This document shows, piece by piece, positions 24,204 through 31,680 of a DNA stretch of 64,000 nt (its first letter is position 1; each line of letters begins with the position of its first letter). This DNA is from Guillardia theta CCMP2712 (taxonomy: Eukaryota; Protista; Cryptophyta). A model generated the notes under the pieces. The model worked only from the letters and a program-made list of their open reading frames with translations, ran no database searches and had not been told where the DNA came from. The DNA is taken from contig NW_005434595.1 in NCBI RefSeq assembly GCF_000315625.1, positions 297,826-361,825 of the forward strand, given 5' to 3'. A program made the position numbers and the translations under genes.

Positions 24204-25765
24204 CTATGCATACTCCACTTCCTCCGATTCTTCGTGCCAGGATTCCACTTCTTCTTCCCGTGCAGCAAGGGTTTCGTCGTCGTCTGAAAGTTTTATCCCA
24301 CCCTTCTCTTCACTATTACAGAGGTCAGAAATAATTTCCAAATGCTCATGGCAAACCTTTTACTTCCGGCTGCATAGCGAGCTTGAGCTTTAGCAACGGC
24401 AGCAGCAAGAGTGTCTTCTTTGAAAGAAGTGGCACTGTCATGATTAGACCCAGCAAGCTCGATTTTCTCTTCTGCACGCAACAAATGATTTAGACAGAAC
24501 CTAATCATTGATAGTCATCGTATTACCAGTAGTTAGCCGTGAGCGGCCTGCATTAGCCGATGGCACCTTGCTGGTCGTAGATGGCGTCGGTATTGTTTGC
24601 GGCTTGGGTGCTTGCTTTGCTGCCATGGTTTGCTGGATTGGCTTTGGAGGGACAGCTGGCTGTTGGGCTTCCTTGAAGATGGGCAGGTTCTGGGGCAGAG
24701 TGCCCCGAATAGTGGCCGCATGCAACATAGCCTGTGTTTCCACGTTGCTTTCTTTGGAGTTGGCAAGATTCAAGGGCTTGAGATTCTTAGAGTCGATCGC
24801 GTGCACGTCAGCCTTCATAACCAGCAGCACCTGCACACATTCAAACTGTCCACGACGAGCCGCCCAATGAAGAGGAGTTCGTTGCATCTGATCTCGAGCC
24901 TGTCAAAAGTCGCATTAGCAAATCGCAAGTGCACCAGGCTTCACGCCCAGATTCTCAATCGTCCTCACCTCCTTATTCGCCCCTAATTCACACAGCTTGT
25001 AGACTACCTCCGCATGCCCTTTGTAGCAAGCCCAATGCATTGGGCTTCGACCACCTTTTCATGAGATTAGCTGAATCATCCATGGGCTGCAGTTCTACTC
25101 ACTGTTGTTGGGCCATGGATTCTTGTCAGGATGGTTGAGGTCAGATCCCAGCTGAGCCAAGACAGCAACAGCATTTGCGTGGCCCTTTCTCGCTGCATGG
25201 TGCAAAGGTGTCCTCGCCAGGAAGTCTACTGCAGTCAGATCTGCTCCTAGCTCAACCAGCCTTGAGATTGCATTGATGTGCCCTTCTCTGGCTGCATAAT
25301 GAAGAGGGGTCCTCTTCCACATGTCCTGGTTAGCACTAGAGTTACATGCATGTCATTGTGGCCTTCGCAAGAAGGATAAAAGCAGGCATAGCTAGAAGAT
25401 TCACGCTCTTATGTTCACAAAATGGTGCTCACGAACTGACATCCACAAGAGAATGTCAAGCCTTTTACCTGATAGTTGACGGGCGCTCCAGACTGCACTA
25501 ACAGGTTAATTCCAGCTGGGTCCAACCCTTCAACATTATTCTCTGTCGCCGCTTTGATCAGCTCTTCGCCGGCTTGCTCCTCGGTTATGGCTTCTCCGTC
25601 TACACCCAGGGCATTCCCTCCTCCACGGAGTCGCATCAGGATTTCGTTCCCTCTTACTGCCGTAATGCATGGGGCACATGTTCTCGCTCTTGCCCCATCC
25701 ACGCATCCTCCCAGGGTAATGAGGAGCATGCATCCGCTCGAGAAGAGGAGGTATGTGAAGGGCAT
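24204..25765 (-). CDS. Ankyrin-repeat protein with signal peptide and RLRGG motif
   Basis: ATG 25765 MPFTYLLFSSGCMLLITLGGC; intron 25326-25468; ANK repeats KRTPLHYAA, RTPLHHAA, QRTPLHWAA; acidic last exon ending EEVEYA* (TAG 24204-24206). Confidence 0.75.
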
Positions 25766-26382
25766 AGTTCTTGTCCCCCGCTGCACTCGAAACTCACCTT
25801 TTCCTCCCCACTCCTCCTTGCCCGCATGCCTCATCGCTCCCATGGCCGCCGCAGTCCTTTTAACAGGAGGGGGGGTGGGGTGTCCGAGGGACCTGGAGGG
25901 GGTGGGACAGTAGTCTACCGAAAACTTGGAGTACGGGTGAATATGAGCAAAGGGTAACGGGTGGGGGTCCTCCCAGACACCCCATCTCCAGGGCCCGCAT
26001 GCATGTTCCCTCATCCCCGCGCAATCACCGGAATGAGGTCCGGGCGCAGTCCGGGCGCTGGTCCGGTCGCTGGTCCGGGCAGGCCCGGGTCAAGGCCCGG
26101 GTCAACGTGCTTGACGATGGCAGACCCGCCCCGGGACAGGATATGAGCCGGTGTTCACAAATAAAAACTTTTCTGACTAGGCCAGGGTGTCCTGAAACTA
26201 AAATGTGAATTTTAGAGATTGTAGCACTACTGGTAAGTAATTGGACTTGAATGTAGAGCTATGGGATCTAAGTAGGATTCGAAGTAGGTTCAATACTTTT
26301 CCTTTAGTTTTTTGTCAATTTTATTGTTTCACAATATTTCAAACCACAAACTTCCATGGCAGGGCCATTGCACCATACGTCA

Positions 26383-26700
26383 TCACTGTACTGCATCACT
26401 CTACTTGTACTGAATGAAGTGATTACTGTACAATCAACATCTCTACTTCTGTCTAATGTATCAACCATCATTTCTACTTGTGCTCTACTGAAGTATACCT
26501 ATCACTGCTGAAGTATAACTATCACCCTACTGCATCACTACTCTACTGGTACTCTACTGAAGTATACCTATCACTACTGAAGTATAACTATCACCCTACT
26601 GCATCACTACTCTACTGAGTGCATCACTCTACTTGTACTCTACTGAAGTATACCGTATACCTATCAGCATTCACTCCACTGCATCCGACTCTGAAGTATA
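26383..26700. repeat. Degenerate tandem repeat, two 69-bp units (from 26483 and 26552) built of CTACTGAAGTATA and TGCATCACT submotifs
   Basis: Read directly; lies downstream of the YR stop codon. Confidence 0.85.
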
Positions 26701-26903
26701 TCTCCTGTTTAGTGTACTCTAGGAGGTGATCACAGTACAGTCACCATCTCCTAGTCTTCGTCATTCTACTTGTCATTCAACGGTTCTCGTCTGATTCTGA
26801 CTTGCCCATATCTTCCAGTCACTTTATTACACTCAGTGATATGGTTATCGTGATTGATTGGAAATTAACAAGTCATTGAATTTATACTCAGCTACGATTC
26901 AAC

Positions 26904-29470
26904 TCACTCTCCTCTCTCTCTCAGTTTCTTCACTAACGTGTTCCACTTCAATTGCCCTTTCCGCCTGGATCTTCCTGCGTTTAACCACGCAAAGAATGAA
27001 TCCTGGTACATCACGAATATCTCCCGACATTCAGTCAAGCGGATGTCCACAGGTCCCCCTCCTCTTTGCAAGTTTTCCAACCGTCTCTGCACTTCTTCCC
27101 GTGTGTCTTGGTCTTGATTGGCTAGGATCCTTCTTACATGCTGCTCGAAACATTTCACCAGGTATTTCACATCTGAAAGACGTTTCTTGCAGTTCTTCGT
27201 GTGCAACACTGACGGGTCAACAGAGCGTAACATGGGTATCTTCTTCGTTCCATTTCCGCAGAACCACAAGTTCCATGCCTGCATCATGCTCCCAAGTTCA
27301 TCCGGCAGGAAAACATTGGTGGGAAAAGAATCACTTCTTCCTGTCTCTGACCCTGCTCCATTGATGTCGGAGATGTTTTCGTCAGATGATTGTTGTCCTG
27401 GTCGCCTCATGCCCCCAACACGCTCTACTGCAGCTTCAGCTTCAAGGTTCGTGACTTGGCTGGTCCTTGTAGAATTGTCTCGAAACTCTCCCTCGCGTAG
27501 CACCTCTCGAAGGCACTCTTTGATAAACTCCTTGTGCATTGATGTATTCCCGTGGACTACTTGCATGTTATTCTGACCTGCTGCAATCCTGTCTGCGTAC
27601 TCTCTGAAATGAATCATATCGGCCTGTATTTTAGCCAAAGACGTCAAAACTTTCTCATTGTGAATATACTGGTGAACATGAGGAGGTATGCCCGTGCCTT
27701 CAATCCTCCCCCTTGCTTCTTGCGGCATACAGCACACCACTTTTGGCTTCAACATGGGCACCATCCCTTCATCTTGAAAAAGTGTTGATTGCCATAACGG
27801 GTGACTCGGCTCCAGGTTACGTTTCAGAAAATCCAAATGATATACCACCGATGCCAGCACATATTCTGCGACTCCCTTCATGCATGCTGGCAGAGTGGGA
27901 AACAATTGATCGATTGCCTTTGTCAGATTCTCATCCCTGTCGACAAAGTGCGGAGGCAAAATAGCAAATTCTGCCTGGTCTATCGGTAGCCCCGCAACTG
28001 TCCGCCCTGTCATACTTCGTGAGCCCATGAAAAGCCTGAAAGATATCTGATGAGCTTACCTACAAAACAATCCCCTGCTGCTTCATATCTTAGATAAGTC
28101 TGAAAGATAGGGCCATTGGCCCATCCTGCTCGCTCTGAAAGTGACGCACTTGAGGGACAGTGCGTGCTTCCAGATGCACAAAATGTCGCAGACCCCTTTC
28201 GTATCGAGTGACTGCCTATGTCTTCCGGTTGCAGACCTAGGGATAATAAATGGGTCGTCACTGCCCTTTGAACTGTATCCATCTGATCATGAATTTCTGC
28301 CTCATCAACATCCATGTCATCGGTTGCCTCGCCTCTGTTGTTGGGCGGCTTCATAATTTGCCCAAGGACTTGCATGAATCGTTTGTATTGTGATCGGCCT
28401 GGGAACAAGCATAGATCGTCTGGAACATAGCACAAGAAGTAGATTCCAAGGGCCAGAATAGGGCAAATCTCCGGGCTGATGGGGTTTGCATATATTCTCC
28501 TGGGATCTCGCGGTCTATCTCCACTCTGATCAGTCTTGCTATGTGCAAAATATATTTGAAGATGGTCTTCATTCCAACACATATGATTGAATTGTATGGA
28601 TTCTGCATTCCCAGCACGACACATAAGATTCCAGCAAATGATCAAGAACGTGCGTGCAAAGATGTAAACCCTCTTCTTGCAAAATAACATGTTCTTGCTG
28701 AACAAGCGATACGTTGACATACTCATAGGCTCTTTCCCACTCGTTATTTTGAGTACTCCAGTCGAATCCGCAAGATTGCAATCACGCTTCAGTCCAATGT
28801 AATATTCCTGTACCTCGTTCTTGAACTGTGATGGGACGTCATGTTGAAAGTCTCTGAATAGGCTGTTCAATGCCGATCGATGGTTGCTGTACGTTGCAAA
28901 ACCATTGTCGGTGGTACCTCTAATATGTGTAATCCACAGAAGAAAGTCATCCGCAGTCAAGCGGTCGAAGTGCAGAGGATAAACTCTCTCTGTACTGCCT
29001 GTGAAAAAAACAAAGGTCATTCATTACTTGCGAACAATGAAACCCTCCTAACCTGTCCACTCAACCGAATTTTCCAGAAGGACTTCTCTGATACGTTTTC
29101 TGGAAGGCAACGGTGGATCCCCTTCCATTTCCATTTGAATCTTTTCCTTGAATTCATCAGTCAAAACAGCTTGCATATTTTGGTACAGGAATTGCAAAAA
29201 ACGAACAATGCTAGATGTATATGCAGCTCTTGAATTCTGTGAAACTCTGCTAGCTCGAATTGCTGACATATTTTGTCGTACAGCAGCCAGATCAAATGGA
29301 TGCGCTACTCCATCAGACCTCCTGTTGTTTCTTCGACCACCGACTTGACCTCGTCGACCTTGATCGGCGATATTCTGCTCAATCACAACAGCTGGTTGAA
29401 GTTCTTGTCTTGCATCATTATTCTGCATATCATTGGGAGAATCAGATTCTTCAGGAGACATGCTGTTCAT
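26904..29470 (-). CDS. Crypton tyrosine recombinase, 819 aa after splicing
   Basis: Exons 29470-29053, 28998-28060 and 28006-26904; GT-AG introns 28999-29052 and 28007-28059; total 2460 nt in frame. Catalytic R (CWNLMCR), K (HSKTDQ), HxxR (GSHSIRKG), W (RAGW), Y (QTYLRYEAAGDCFVG|RTVAGLP). Confidence 0.9.
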
Positions 29471-30249
29471 CACAAGGCTGTCCGTGCAGCCTACACAAGA
29501 GAGTTTGTGGAGGCCACAGTTTATGGCTCGGCTATTGCCTATAAGAATCCTCCCATCCTCCTGAAATAACCCCTCCTAAATTCAAGATTACTCTTACTCA
29601 TGGGGGTAGGTACCCACAGTAACTCCATCCTCCGAATAGAACAACAATTTGCTCAAAATAGCAAACGTGTAATTGTTTGTCATATTCAAAAACAATTCAC
29701 TGTATGATCAAATAAGAACCAATGATTTCATCACATGGCTCCAATTATCTGAATATACTTGTAAGATATACCAGTATGTAGGATTTGAGATATGGTCGAT
29801 CTGAGGCAGACTCGGAAAATGGGTAGGATAAGATCCTTCGCTCGTCCTCCGAAACTACTATATGTTTTGTACAAACATTATTATAAAGTATCCATGGATG
29901 GAGGACATGCTGGTACCTCGATCAGTACGTTCAAACGCTACCATGGTACCTTTGTATAGATTCAATGCCGCTAAACTTGATCTTGGTATTTTTATATATC
30001 TTGATCGTTTGTACTGTATTCCTTTGGCTACTTGTATAAATTCTGGTAATGATCAACTTTTAATAAATAAAATTTAGAGCTGCAACAATAGGACCCCCCG
30101 TCGTGGTACCCCCCAGGCACACTCATCATACCCCCTACAATCCCAGAGTGGTCTGTAGACAAAAACTAATGTGCCCGAACCCCGACCACCCCACCCCCAC
30201 GTTTTATATCGTTCACATTCGTACCTCCTGCAGGGATCGGCGACAGCAA

Positions 30250-31680
<1,431 letters not shown>

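What the first reader, a model, noticed from the sequence alone, without database searches (positions are those of the whole stretch)
26150..30085. Intact, intron-containing Crypton tyrosine-recombinase transposon in an apparent cryptophyte-like alga
Seen: three minus-strand ORFs splice through two canonical 54- and 53-nt introns into one uninterrupted 819-aa protein with a complete R-K-HxxR-W-Y catalytic set, N-terminal core-binding helices (SRAAYTSSIVRF, YSNHRSALNSLF) and a C-terminal W.LWF.G..IP.LR..KRLSD block. Established: YR-only, intron-bearing DNA transposons are Cryptons, and the GSHSIRKG..SGST..RAGW..YLRYEAAGD.FVGRTVAGLP signature resembles the oomycete/diatom (CryptonS-like) type. 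Inference: an intact copy with host-sized introns may be an active or recently active element, or a domesticated recombinase, in a lineage where I know of no described Cryptons. It would be a candidate eukaryote-adapted site-specific recombinase.
Basis: partly seen in the sequence, partly recalled or inferred. Interest (0 to 1): 0.85.

Follow-up and report, generated by a model that had tools for sequence, protein, structure and literature searches.

The report
Expressed Crypton transposon in a cryptophyte
This is a 3.6-kb jumping gene of the Crypton kind in a Guillardia-like alga. Its single gene, a Cre-like tyrosine recombinase of 819 residues, is intact, transcribed and correctly spliced, so it is a well-supported new example of a known kind of element rather than a new kind.

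Summary
Exons at 29470-29053, 28998-28060 and 28006-26904 (minus strand) join through GT..AG introns of 54 and 53 nt into an 819-aa frame without stops. Assembled contigs of two runs from separate studies carry exactly this joined form at 100% identity. A DNA-like run keeps both introns.

The exon-2 model (pLDDT 91.9) matches Cre at Z 15.8, with R267, K294, H403, R406, W432 and Y441 in place. The whole C-terminal half aligns with oomycete proteins, as described for CryptonS.

The real element is 29859-26253 (3607 bp). Both ends are conserved in a sub-family about 30% diverged in DNA. The 3' end motif occurs 17 times in the genome against 1 in the control. Deletion derivatives keep both ends. 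There are no inverted or long repeats. Junctions carry an A/T-rich (T/A)AC-WTAT repeat.

A 98.9% identical copy in another sample abuts DNA that lies on contig C21 of this genome, where no copy was found. That argues for mobility and against domestication.

More than 90 diverged relatives lie in this 87-Mb genome and form a cryptophyte clade with Hanusia. This scan had already noted the family elsewhere in the same genome. Verdict: new member of a known kind, moderate interest.

The parts
26253..29859 (-). Whole Crypton-type element, 3607 bp, from 5' AGTAGTTTCGGAGGACG... to 3' ...GATCCCATAGCTCTAC
   Evidence: Both termini recur in the diverged C50/C502/C2 sub-family, next to unrelated flanks. 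The metagenome contig L071 matches 29865-26251 at 98.9% and then leaves for other DNA.
29860..29865 (-). 5' junction hexamer ACATAT in the flank, a candidate target or crossover sequence of the form (T/A)AC-WTAT
   Evidence: AC-WTAT precedes the element in 4 of 6 independent 5' junctions: window, L071, C50 and C502. The mini-element junction shows ATAT only if an extra AGT is counted as element, and C34 lacks the motif.
29820..29859 (-). Conserved 5' terminal block, AGTAsTTTsGGAGGA..GAAGGA..TATCCTACC
   Evidence: It aligns with the C50 sub-family, whereas the following non-coding DNA does not align. The 15-nt motif matches exactly at 11 genome sites.
29823..29829 (-). Sub-terminal ATCCTAC motif, copy 1
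   Evidence: There are three copies in the element, all in the same orientation and all within 85 nt of an end.
29778..29784 (-). Sub-terminal ATCCTAC motif, copy 2. The next bases, ATAC, form the pseudo-site at which contig L071 shows a second copy joined
26805..29512 (-). mRNA as assembled in two runs: 5' UTR about 42 nt, 3' UTR about 99 nt
   Evidence: Contigs of X1 and X2 end at 29512/29505 and 26805/26809. Depth is zero in the intergenic bins on either side.
29053..29470 (-). Exon 1 coding part, residues 1-139 plus one base. It holds a basic, low-complexity N-terminus and the first SAM-like core-binding helices
   Evidence: Pfam Phage_int_SAM_4 matches residues 68-106 weakly (E 0.016). 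The same family is matched by 5 of 62 relatives, best E 2e-5.
28999..29052 (-). Intron 1, 54 nt, GT..AG, phase 1
   Evidence: It is removed in the X1 and X2 contigs and kept in the X12 contig. The same position is interrupted in C34, C2, C50, C502, C14 and C72.
28060..28998 (-). Exon 2: rest of the core-binding domain and the catalytic domain with R267, K294, H403, R406, W432 and Y441
   Evidence: AF2 pLDDT 91.9. The Foldseek top 50 are all tyrosine recombinases. VIA-align gives Z 15.8 to Cre 1ma7_B over 233 residues at rmsd 3.1.
28007..28059 (-). Intron 2, 53 nt, GT..AG, phase 1, lying 12 codons after the nucleophile tyrosine
   Evidence: It is removed in X1 and X2 and kept in X12. It is present only in the window and C34 copies and absent from C50, C502, C128 and C45.
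26904..28006 (-). Exon 3 with the stop codon. It holds an extension of the catalytic domain, a long helix, a disordered linker and a C-terminal helical domain with WNLWFCG...KRLSD
   Evidence: AF2 pLDDT 81. It aligns end to end with Lagenidium P0114 (1e-38) and Phytophthora nicotianae P0095 (5e-32). Residues 1-115 of the piece match an Atlas cluster that carries NDC10_II.
26823..26828 (-). AATAAA, about 18 nt before the end of the assembled transcripts
26473..26617 (.). 69-nt tandem repeat (2.1 copies) in the untranscribed 3' part of the element
26253..26281 (-). Conserved 3' terminal block GAATCCTACTTAGATCCCATAGCTCTAC, which includes ATCCTAC copy 3 (26272-26278)
   Evidence: 28 of 29 bases are identical to the C2 and C50 copies, while the adjacent DNA cannot be aligned. 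The 16-nt motif gives 17 genome hits against 1 for the reversed control.

Best explanation
Window 29859-26253 is one full-length, probably autonomous copy of a Crypton-type DNA transposon of the CryptonS-like group, resident in a cryptophyte nuclear genome.

**Shown**
- The element carries its own transcription unit, 29512 to 26805.
- The pre-mRNA loses two host-type introns and then encodes an 819-aa protein.
- That protein has a SAM-like core-binding domain, a Cre-like catalytic domain with a complete R-K-H-R-W-Y set, and the C-terminal region shared with oomycete and diatom relatives.
- The two ends of the element are conserved across diverged sub-families. They are not inverted repeats.
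- Copies, end fragments and internal-deletion derivatives lie at unrelated loci.

**Inferred**
- The recombinase binds the conserved ends, and perhaps the same-orientation ATCCTAC motifs beside them.
- It joins the 3' end ...CTCTAC to the 5' end AGTAG... across a short A/T-rich overlap (WTAT) to give a circle.
- It then recombines that joint with genomic sites that resemble it, (T/A)AC-WTAT. This leaves the short imperfect direct repeat seen at the junctions and makes no true target-site duplication.
- This is the Goodwin model for Cryptons, which mutation-accumulation data in Chlamydomonas fit (PMC9977147).
For: **Gene and splicing.** Searches give the ORFs, junctions and frame. One search shows the joined form in runs from two studies at 100% identity, the unspliced form in a DNA-like run, and no depth in the flanking intergenic bins.

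**Fold and catalytic residues.**

**Architecture shared with oomycete and diatom proteins.** These proteins are 41-46% identical over the catalytic part, and some are named by UniRef as core-binding, Tyr-recombinase or Ndc10 domain proteins. Published CryptonS elements are 2.8-3.9 kb with 4-29 copies (PMC3212892 Additional file 1).

**No other enzyme and no terminal repeats.**

**Ends.**
- 5' AGTAsTTTsGGAGGA and 3' GATCCCATAGCTCTAC are shared with the C50/C502/C2 sub-family, next to different flanks.
- C50 and C502 are 99.4% identical copies in different flanks.
- The 3' motif gives 17 hits against 1 in the control.

**Derivatives.**
- A mini-element has 17 nt of the 5' end plus 117 nt of the 3' end.
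- The 5' and 3' motifs lie 60 nt apart on C269.
- A 98.6% identical 3' fragment on C262 is capped by telomere repeat.

**Junctions.**
- Four of six 5' flanks end in AC-WTAT: window, L071, C50 and C502.
- All seven 3' flanks begin with three A/T bases, and three of the seven read WTAT.
- The L071 copy has TACATAT on both sides.

**Another locus in another sample.** L071 is 98.9% identical over the whole element. Its 3' flank maps to C21:126532-126651 at 98%. None of the DNA, protein or end-motif searches found a copy on C21.

**Selection.** dN/dS of the window against the decayed C34 copy is 0.28. Polarised changes are 3 nonsynonymous and 8 synonymous on the window lineage, against 20 and 9 on C34.

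**A second sub-family shows the same behaviour.** It has four copies at 96-99% identity, sharp ends, 3733 bp, no inverted repeats.
Against: - Only one intact copy of this sub-family is in the reference assembly.
- The window copy's own junctions share only ACAT (5' ACATAT, 3' TACATTC), not a perfect repeat.
- The TATGG termini typical of CryptonS are absent.
- No circle junction, excision footprint or de novo insertion was observed.
- The 5' side of L071 is a piece of the element (positions 22-85), not C21 DNA. The structure in that sample is therefore complex and comes from a short-read assembly.
- Runs X1 and X2 are only guessed to be RNA, though intron removal and exon-only depth fit nothing else.
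- Strong purifying selection on a lone copy is also what a host-kept gene would show.
- No Repbase or Dfam comparison was possible.
Confidence: 0.75

Rival explanations
1. It is a Crypton-derived recombinase gene kept by the host. Under this reading it is a stationary single-copy gene at this locus, serving a cellular function through an active or DNA-binding recombinase, and no longer a mobile element.
For: - There is one intact copy of the sub-family in the assembly.
- The mRNA is well expressed and correctly spliced, with a lineage-specific intron.
- The window lineage shows about 0.1 nonsynonymous per synonymous change, while its sister copy decays.
- This family has produced at least one catalytically dead, intron-free paralogue (C128), so domestication does occur in it.
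Against: - Both element ends are still attached and match ends conserved across sub-families.
- A 98.9% identical copy abuts C21 DNA in another sample.
- A 98.6% identical fragment lies at a telomere on C262, and derivatives keep both ends.
- The catalytic set is complete, whereas known Crypton-derived genes mostly lack it (PMC3212892).
- No close Hanusia orthologue of this copy turned up. The best Hanusia hit is 46% identical to exon 2 and groups with C72.
Confidence: 0.12
2. It is a young but already immobile copy. The frame is still open and transcribed only because too little time has passed for it to decay, and the family is no longer transposing.
For: - No second intact copy and no identical copy exists in the assembly.
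- Many relatives carry stops or deletions.
- The window's junction repeat is imperfect.
Against: - Synonymous changes have accumulated on the window lineage without matching nonsynonymous ones: 8 against 3, compared with 9 against 20 on C34. The frame has therefore been under selection, not merely young.
- A copy at another locus in another sample points to recent movement.
Confidence: 0.1
3. It is the integrase of an integrated virus, such as a polinton-like virus or virophage, or part of a DIRS/Ngaro-type retroelement, rather than a Crypton.
For: Cryptophyte polinton-like viruses encode tyrosine recombinases (PMC12220804).
Against: - The unit is 3.6 kb with one gene. Neither the unit nor its flanks hold a capsid, polymerase, RT, RNase H or methyltransferase ORF.
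- The flanks carry ordinary ORFs, one with ankyrin repeats and one papain-type protease-like, read from their translations only.
- There are no split or inverted terminal repeats.
- The architecture and the whole C-terminal half match the oomycete family.
Confidence: 0.03

Closest known systems
CryptonS elements of oomycetes and a diatom (Kojima and Jurka 2011, PMC3212892)
   Same: - Size of about 3-4 kb and low copy number.
- A single protein: SAM-like N-terminal domain, tyrosine-recombinase domain and a conserved C-terminal region that is not Pfam GCR1_C.
- 41-46% identity over the catalytic part, and end-to-end alignment of the C-terminal half with Phytophthora, Lagenidium, Aphanomyces and Nitzschia proteins.
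- No inverted or long terminal repeats.
   Different: - The host is a cryptophyte.
- The 17 copies from this genome plus Hanusia form their own side of the tree (SH-aLRT 93).
- The termini are AGTAG... and ...CTCTAC with an A/T-rich WTAT-type junction, not TATGG.
- Host-type introns are present, and their positions differ between sub-families.
- I could not compare with the Repbase sequences themselves.
CryptonF-1_cRei of Chlamydomonas reinhardtii, the first Crypton seen to move (PMC9977147)
   Same: - The model is the same: a short motif at one terminus recombines with a near-identical genomic target.
- Insertions lie close to genes. Here the 5' end lies about 375 nt from the start of the neighbouring transcript.
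- Partial dimers occur.
   Different: - CryptonF proteins carry a GCR1_C domain. None is detectable here, either in 201 sequences scanned with Pfam across alignments A1, A2 and A3 (which share some members) or in the genome.
- The target there is CAYCG, whereas here it is A/T-rich.
- Movement was observed there and is only inferred here.
Cre, Flp, XerH and the Tn1549 integrase (solved tyrosine recombinases)
   Same: - A two-domain clamp fold. Z is 15.8 to Cre, 13.3 to Flp, 13.5 to XerH and 13.2 to the Tn1549 integrase.
- The same catalytic positions, with Trp in place of the second His, as in Cre and Flp.
   Different: - About 15% sequence identity, and no Pfam Phage_integrase hit on this protein.
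- About 140 extra N-terminal and 370 extra C-terminal residues.
- The recombination site is unknown.
Crypton-derived host genes (DUF3504 genes; Gcr1, Cbf2/Ndc10)
   Same: Descent from Crypton recombinases. The start of exon 3 resembles a cluster annotated NDC10_II.
   Different: Those genes have lost catalytic residues and element ends. This copy keeps both.

Membership tests
Crypton (tyrosine-recombinase DNA transposons) | Encodes a tyrosine recombinase with the catalytic R-H-R-Y tetrad | tested here: met
   The fold matches Cre at Z 15.8. R267, H403, R406 and Y441, plus K294 and W432, sit on conserved columns.
Crypton (tyrosine-recombinase DNA transposons) | No reverse transcriptase, RNase H, methyltransferase or DDE transposase in the unit | tested here: met
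   There is one gene in 3607 bp. The remaining ORFs are short antisense or overlapping frames. Pfam finds nothing else.
Crypton (tyrosine-recombinase DNA transposons) | No terminal inverted repeats and no long direct or split repeats | tested here: met
   The repeat finder on 26000-30300 gave no pair joining the ends. The 5' and 3' terminal sequences are unrelated apart from the 7-nt ATCCTAC motif.
Crypton (tyrosine-recombinase DNA transposons) | Dispersed copies with defined ends at unrelated loci | tested here: met
   Copies or pieces lie in the window and on C34, C262 and C112, in mini-elements, and in the L071 copy next to C21 DNA. The sister sub-family lies on C50, C502 and C2 with the same ends.
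Crypton (tyrosine-recombinase DNA transposons) | Short (4-6 bp) direct repeats at both termini that serve as recombination substrates | tested here: inconclusive
   L071 has TACATAT at both junctions. The window has ACATAT against TACATTC. C50 has ACTTAT against TACATAA. Four of six 5' flanks end in AC-WTAT, and three of seven 3' flanks start with WTAT. The pattern is clear but the repeats are imperfect.
Crypton (tyrosine-recombinase DNA transposons) | Excision as a circle and reintegration | not testable with these tools
   The single read-laying run showed no joint of the two ends. Most runs were assembled contigs, which drop rare forms.
CryptonS group | Conserved C-terminal region shared within the group, without a GCR1_C domain | tested here: met
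   Exon 3 aligns over its whole length with oomycete proteins. PF12550 was not found in alignments A1, A2 and A3 or in the genome, although the control genomes were silent too. A language-model feature search pointed at GCR1_C clusters (0.93), which I treat as a lead only.
CryptonS group | TATGG (5-6 bp) terminal repeats in most members | tested here: not met
   The junctions read (T/A)AC-WTAT. There is no TATGG at either end of this sub-family or of sub-family A.
CryptonS group | Placement inside the CryptonS clade in a recombinase phylogeny with reference elements | tested here: inconclusive
   The tree was built without Repbase references. The cryptophyte sequences form the sister side to all oomycete, diatom and environmental relatives (SH-aLRT 93, midpoint root, quick search).
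CryptonA / DUF3504 | Match to Pfam DUF3504 | tested here: not met
   No such hit at E up to 1 on any exon.

The most novel reading that the evidence does not exclude
Cryptophytes hold an old, diversified clade of CryptonS-like elements of their own. Under this reading the recombinase recognises a compact site built from the element's own joint (...CTCTAC-WTAT-AGTAG...) plus same-orientation ATCCTAC arm motifs, and integrates at genomic look-alikes of that joint. The window copy would then be a working, intron-bearing, nucleus-adapted site-specific integrase with a definable minimal substrate. The family would also be a recurring source of host genes and of gene-proximal sequence in this alga.
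Probability: 0.3. Interest if true: 0.6.

Novelty: new member of a known kind. Interest (0 to 1): 0.45.

Why it matters
Cryptons are among the least understood eukaryotic transposons. Movement has been seen only in Chlamydomonas, and no Crypton recombinase or its site has been characterised biochemically.

This copy offers a complete protein sequence backed by transcript evidence. It also offers both element ends, a candidate crossover sequence, natural deletion derivatives that mark the minimal ends, and a likely insertion polymorphism. Together these make a direct test possible with the spliced cDNA and substrates carrying the two ends.

The finding extends the CryptonS-like group from stramenopiles to cryptophytes as a deep clade of its own. 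That bears on how old these elements are.

A gene call in the public protein collection covers only the last 237 residues. It lies on a 405,718-base contig whose source the tool hides, which suggests it is this genome's own record. The recombinase itself is therefore easy to miss.

Tried and rejected
- **Pfam on the three exon translations.** Only a sub-threshold Phage_int_SAM_4 hit.
- **Profile search of solved structures by sequence.** Nothing relevant.
- **Fold of the C-terminal half.** Foldseek against the PDB gave nothing below E 4.7. VIA-align against 48,161 chains matched only the long helix as a generic coiled coil at Z about 5. I do not claim a new fold, because the domains were not folded separately.
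- **GCR1_C link.** It was suggested by the Atlas feature search. It was not supported by Pfam scans of alignments A2 and A3, 139 sequences with some shared members, or by a genome-wide PF12550 search (where the controls were also silent).
- **TATGG termini and terminal inverted repeats.** Not present.
- **First estimate of the 3' end.** I put it at 26731 from the C34 copy. I rejected this once the C2/C50 3' terminus was recognised at 26253, which shows that C34 is 3'-truncated.
- **Target-site duplication in sub-family A.** Only weak resemblance, treated as chance.
- **Larger flanks and the C21 empty site.** I did not try to read those bases by other means.
- **Literature on the sample behind L071 (PRJEB17505).** Nothing found.
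- **Raw RNA run X18.** Only 22 reads lay on the stretch, too few to show the strand or the transcript ends.


Full report
**What is in the sequence**

Three minus-strand ORFs lie at 29473-29048, 29020-28010 and 28028-26904. Read on the minus strand, the joints are canonical. The first is GACAG|GTTAGG...TTCACAG|GCAGT and the second is TTGTAG|GTAAGC...ATGACAG|GGCGG.

With ATG at 29470, the exons are 29470-29053, 28998-28060 and 28006-26904. The introns are 54 nt (29052-28999) and 53 nt (28059-28007), both in phase 1. The joined frame is 2460 nt, which is 819 residues with no internal stop.

**Is the splicing real**

One read-laying run on 26100-30300 used four runs.
- Runs X1 and X2 come from different studies. 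Each holds one contig (2603 nt at depth 498, and 2596 nt at depth 23.5) that is 100% identical to the window.
- These contigs run from 26805/26809 to 29512/29505 and skip exactly 53 and 54 nt with CT..AC on the plus strand, which is GT..AG on the gene's strand.
- Both runs have no depth over 29625-30188 and almost none below 26805, then very high depth on the neighbouring gene from 30232. That pattern is what RNA assemblies give, although the tool only guesses that they are RNA.
- Run X12 has depth across the intergenic DNA. It holds a 1575-nt contig that crosses both introns unspliced, and another contig showing the C34 variant.

So this copy, not its 93% relative, is transcribed and spliced as predicted. 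An AATAAA lies at 26828-26823. The raw RNA run X18 gave only 22 reads and adds nothing.

**What the protein is**

Pfam sees only a sub-threshold SAM-like hit on exon 1 (E 0.016). A sequence profile finds nothing relevant in the PDB.

The structural evidence is clear.
- AlphaFold2 on exon 2 with 61 homologues gave pLDDT 91.9.
- All of Foldseek's top 50 PDB matches are tyrosine recombinases: Cre/Tre, XerH, Flp, XerA and lambda Int.
- VIA-align gives Z 15.8 to Cre (1ma7_B, 233 residues, rmsd 3.1), 13.5 to XerH, 13.3 to Flp and 13.2 to the Tn1549 integrase. Both the core-binding and the catalytic domains are covered.

In the alignment R266 and R289 of the exon-2 piece are invariant. R127, K154, H263, W292 and Y301 are at least 90% conserved. 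In the full protein the catalytic positions are R267, K294, H403, R406, W432 and Y441. The structural register (model 296 to Cre 319) puts Y441 at Cre Y324 and W432 at Cre W315.

Exon 3 modelled at pLDDT 81.
- About 100 well-ordered residues resemble an Atlas cluster tagged NDC10_II (TM 0.60 by the match).
- A long helix, a disordered stretch (piece residues 173-224) and a confident helical C-terminal domain follow. That domain carries WNLWFCG...KRLSD.
- No solved fold matched it beyond a generic coiled coil.

**Relatives elsewhere**

The first query was the intron-free paralogue on C50 (706 aa). The best hit was a Hanusia phi transcript. Many oomycete proteins followed (Phytophthora, Lagenidium, Aphanomyces, Thraustotheca), then a diatom protein (Nitzschia) and many environmental ones.

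The window's exon 2 gives the same picture at 41-46% identity. Some Phytophthora hits are named by UniRef as core-binding, Tyr-recombinase or Ndc10 domain proteins.

The whole of exon 3 aligns with Lagenidium P0114 (E 1e-38) and P. nicotianae P0095 (E 5e-32). The alignment includes the W..W.C...P..R...KRLSD block and the terminal RR.GQL.W.T.

This three-part architecture is how Kojima and Jurka describe CryptonS: oomycetes and a diatom, no GCR1_C domain, and a conserved C-terminal region. Their elements measure 2.8-3.9 kb, have 4-29 copies and mostly end in TATGG.

An exhaustive HMMER search with the last 142 residues found 102 representatives. None carries Pfam GCR1_C, and the genome gives no PF12550 match. 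A feature-based Atlas search did point at GCR1_C clusters. I record that only as a lead.

**The family in this genome**

The assembly is 87,145,349 bases in 669 contigs. That fits the 87.1 Mb quoted for Guillardia theta. This and the Hanusia hit are my basis for the host, so the identification is an inference.

Protein searches find more than 90 matches to exon 2 and to exon 3 on dozens of contigs, from 95% down to under 30% identity. Some carry stops and some lie in long open frames.

I built a maximum-likelihood tree of 66 sequences (quick search, midpoint root). All 17 copies from this genome plus Hanusia fall on one side (SH-aLRT 93). All oomycete, diatom and environmental sequences fall on the other. 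The Hanusia transcript is sister to the C72 copy.

Intron positions differ among sub-families.
- Intron 1 is shared by C34, C2, C50, C502, C14 and C72.
- Intron 2 occurs only in the window and C34.
- C128 and C45 have none.
- C282 has one at another place.

**The ends of the element**

The 93% copy on C34 shares 29859-29801 and 29314-26731 with the window. At first this suggested a 3.1-kb unit.

Comparing C2, C50 and C502 changed that. These copies are about 70% identical to the window in DNA. C50 and C502 are 99.4% identical to each other but lie in different flanks. Their 5' end reads (C)TTAT|AGTACTTTGGGAGGA, and the window reads CATAT|AGTAGTTTCGGAGGA. Their 3' end reads ...GAATCCTACCTAGATCCCATAGCTCTAC and is followed by unrelated DNA in C2 and at two C50 sites. 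The same 29 bases, with one difference, end at window 26253.

The element is therefore 29859-26253, or 3607 bp, and C34 is truncated at its 3' side. C34 also has further damage:
- About 486 nt including the ATG are replaced by 20 nt.
- There is a 1-nt insertion in exon 1.
- A 12-nt deletion removes the stop codon.

Only the first 40 or so and the last 29 or so bases align between the sub-families. The non-coding DNA next to them does not align.

The 3' motif occurs 17 times in the genome with at most one mismatch, against 1 for the reversed control. The 5' motif has 11 exact sites.

ATCCTAC occurs three times in the element, always in the same orientation, at element positions 31, 76 and 3582. 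There are no inverted terminal repeats.

**Derivatives and other copies of this sub-family**

- A mini-element joins 17 nt of the 5' end directly to the last 117 nt. It occurs on C349, C122 and C207 within one larger repeat.
- On C269 the two end motifs lie 60 nt apart.
- C262 holds 213 nt of the 3' part at 98.6% identity, directly capped by CCCTAAA repeats.
- Short pieces of the transcribed region sit inside other repeats on C13, C80, C154, C94, C16 and C11.

**Junctions**

| Copy | 5' flank before the element | 3' flank after CTCTAC |
|---|---|---|
| Window | ..AAAACATAT | ATTC |
| L071 | ..CCTACATAT | ATAT |
| C50 (first site) | ..AAAACTTAT | ATAA |
| C50 (second site) | not read | TTAA |
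| C502 | ..CTCTACTTAT | not read |
| C2 | 5' end missing | TTAT |
| C262 | fragment only | TTAT |
| C112 | not read | AAAT |
| Mini-element | ..GTATATAGT | diverged terminus |
| C34 | ..GCTCAG | 3' end truncated |

Four of the six 5' flanks end in AC-WTAT. The mini-element fits only the ATAT part, and only if an extra AGT is counted as element. C34 does not fit. All seven 3' flanks start with three A/T bases. Three of the seven read WTAT.

Because the element itself ends in TAC, the junction repeat is (T/A)AC-WTAT. It is perfect (TACATAT) in L071 and imperfect elsewhere. This is the kind of short terminal repeat described for Cryptons, but it is not the TATGG of CryptonS.

**A copy at another place in another sample**

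The window's exon-2 ORF is found, residue for residue, on a 3818-nt metagenome contig (L071). That contig matches window 29865-26251 at 98.9%, with 18 mismatches and one gap.

Upstream of the element it carries element positions 22-85, joined at ..CCTACATAT|AGTAG... This is a second copy or fragment joined at an internal look-alike of the junction site.

Downstream it continues into 121 nt that do not match the window. They match C21:126532-126651 of this genome at 98%. No DNA, protein or 3'-motif match lies on C21.

The simplest reading is that a closely related strain carries this element at C21, where the reference has none. There are two caveats.

**Selection**

Between the window and C34, dS is 0.095 and dN/dS is 0.28. 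I polarised the changes with C50, C502 and C128.
- Window lineage: 3 nonsynonymous and 8 synonymous changes.
- C34 lineage: 20 nonsynonymous and 9 synonymous changes.

The window's frame has therefore been kept by selection while its truncated sister drifted. This fits an active element lineage. Taken alone, it would also fit a host-kept gene.

**Mechanism**

Shown:
- The gene, its splicing, its fold and its catalytic residues.
- The conserved asymmetric ends.
- Dispersed copies and derivatives.
- The A/T-rich junction pattern.

Inferred:
- The recombinase pairs the two ends and exchanges strands across a WTAT overlap to give a circle whose joint reads ...CTCTAC-WTAT-AGTAG... .
- It then integrates at genomic (T/A)AC-WTAT sites.
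- The ATCCTAC motifs and the C-terminal domain are the obvious candidates for end recognition.

This follows the Goodwin model, which the Chlamydomonas mutation-accumulation data fit.

**Comparison and verdict**

The element works like, and is best filed with, Cryptons of the CryptonS-like kind. The group-typical termini are not met. Placement relative to reference elements could not be tested.

No paper in the searchable library describes Cryptons in cryptophytes. Repbase and Dfam could not be consulted.

Earlier notes of this scan on other pieces of the same genome reached similar readings for other family members. I treat those as unchecked leads.

My odds are 0.75 for a functional, recently mobile Crypton copy, 0.12 for a domesticated gene, 0.10 for an immobile young relic and 0.03 for a viral or retroelement integrase. 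Novelty: new member of a known kind. Interest: 0.45.

Noticed in passing
L037:1486-3606 (G000:C128:144726-146846): An intron-free 706-aa paralogue, 54% identical in the exon-2 region, has lost the catalytic H, R, W and Y: GSASFSKG replaces GSHSIRKG and there is no RAGW/TYLRY. Its frame is nevertheless open, so it is a candidate domesticated or decaying copy.
   Followed up: partly
window 27533-27637; L020-L024, L027 (C154, C94, C80 three times, C16): A 105-nt piece of exon 3 sits at 92-95% identity inside a repeated unit of about 2 kb. That unit is tandem on C80, with three copies 2.5-2.8 kb apart. Depth in the DNA-like run X12 also peaks here.
   Followed up: partly
L010 and L014 (C11:809977-810301 and 822274-822581): Two inverted copies lie 12 kb apart. 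Each holds a deletion derivative that joins window 27637-27479 directly to 27330-27177.
   Followed up: no
L011 and L012 (C13:942292-942451 and 903761-903920): A 160-nt piece matching window 29502-29351 at 92% lies inside a duplicated segment of more than 3 kb (99.7% identical copies). The piece starts within 10 nt of the assembled transcript's 5' end and covers the first 120 nt of the CDS.
   Followed up: no
L006 (C262:1802-2014): The last 213 nt of an element copy, 98.6% identical to window 26473-26261, directly follow CCCTAAA repeats. This looks like a chromosome end healed inside a Crypton copy.
   Followed up: no
L051-L054, L065-L069 (C282, C47, C319, C114, C43, C1, C6): A second sub-family, 38% identical in protein, has copies at 96-99% identity and sharp ends: 5' AATTAGCTAGCG and 3' GTGTAAATAT. 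It measures 3733 bp on C319 and has no inverted repeats. Its termini differ from those of the window's sub-family.
   Followed up: partly
L038 (C72:195450-197578) and P0001: The C72 copy and a Hanusia phi transcript are sisters, with short branches of 0.10 and 0.14. This is either an orthologous host-kept gene or a lineage shared by the two genera.
   Followed up: no
window 26904-27617; P0294: A gene call on a 405,718-base contig in the public collection covers only the last 237 residues, starting at an internal Met. The recombinase part is missing from that protein record.
   Followed up: partly
window 28007-28059: Intron 2 occurs only in the window and C34 copies. The C50, C502, C128 and C45 relatives read straight through the same codons, and C72 has an intron about 19 codons earlier. 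Introns therefore seem to be gained or lost within this transposon family.
   Followed up: partly
window 30232-31340 (+) and 25095-26014 (-): The element lies between two ORFs judged only from their translations: a papain-type protease-like one and an ankyrin-repeat one. The protease-like one is very highly represented in runs X1 and X2, and its transcript starts about 375 nt from the element's 5' end.
   Followed up: no
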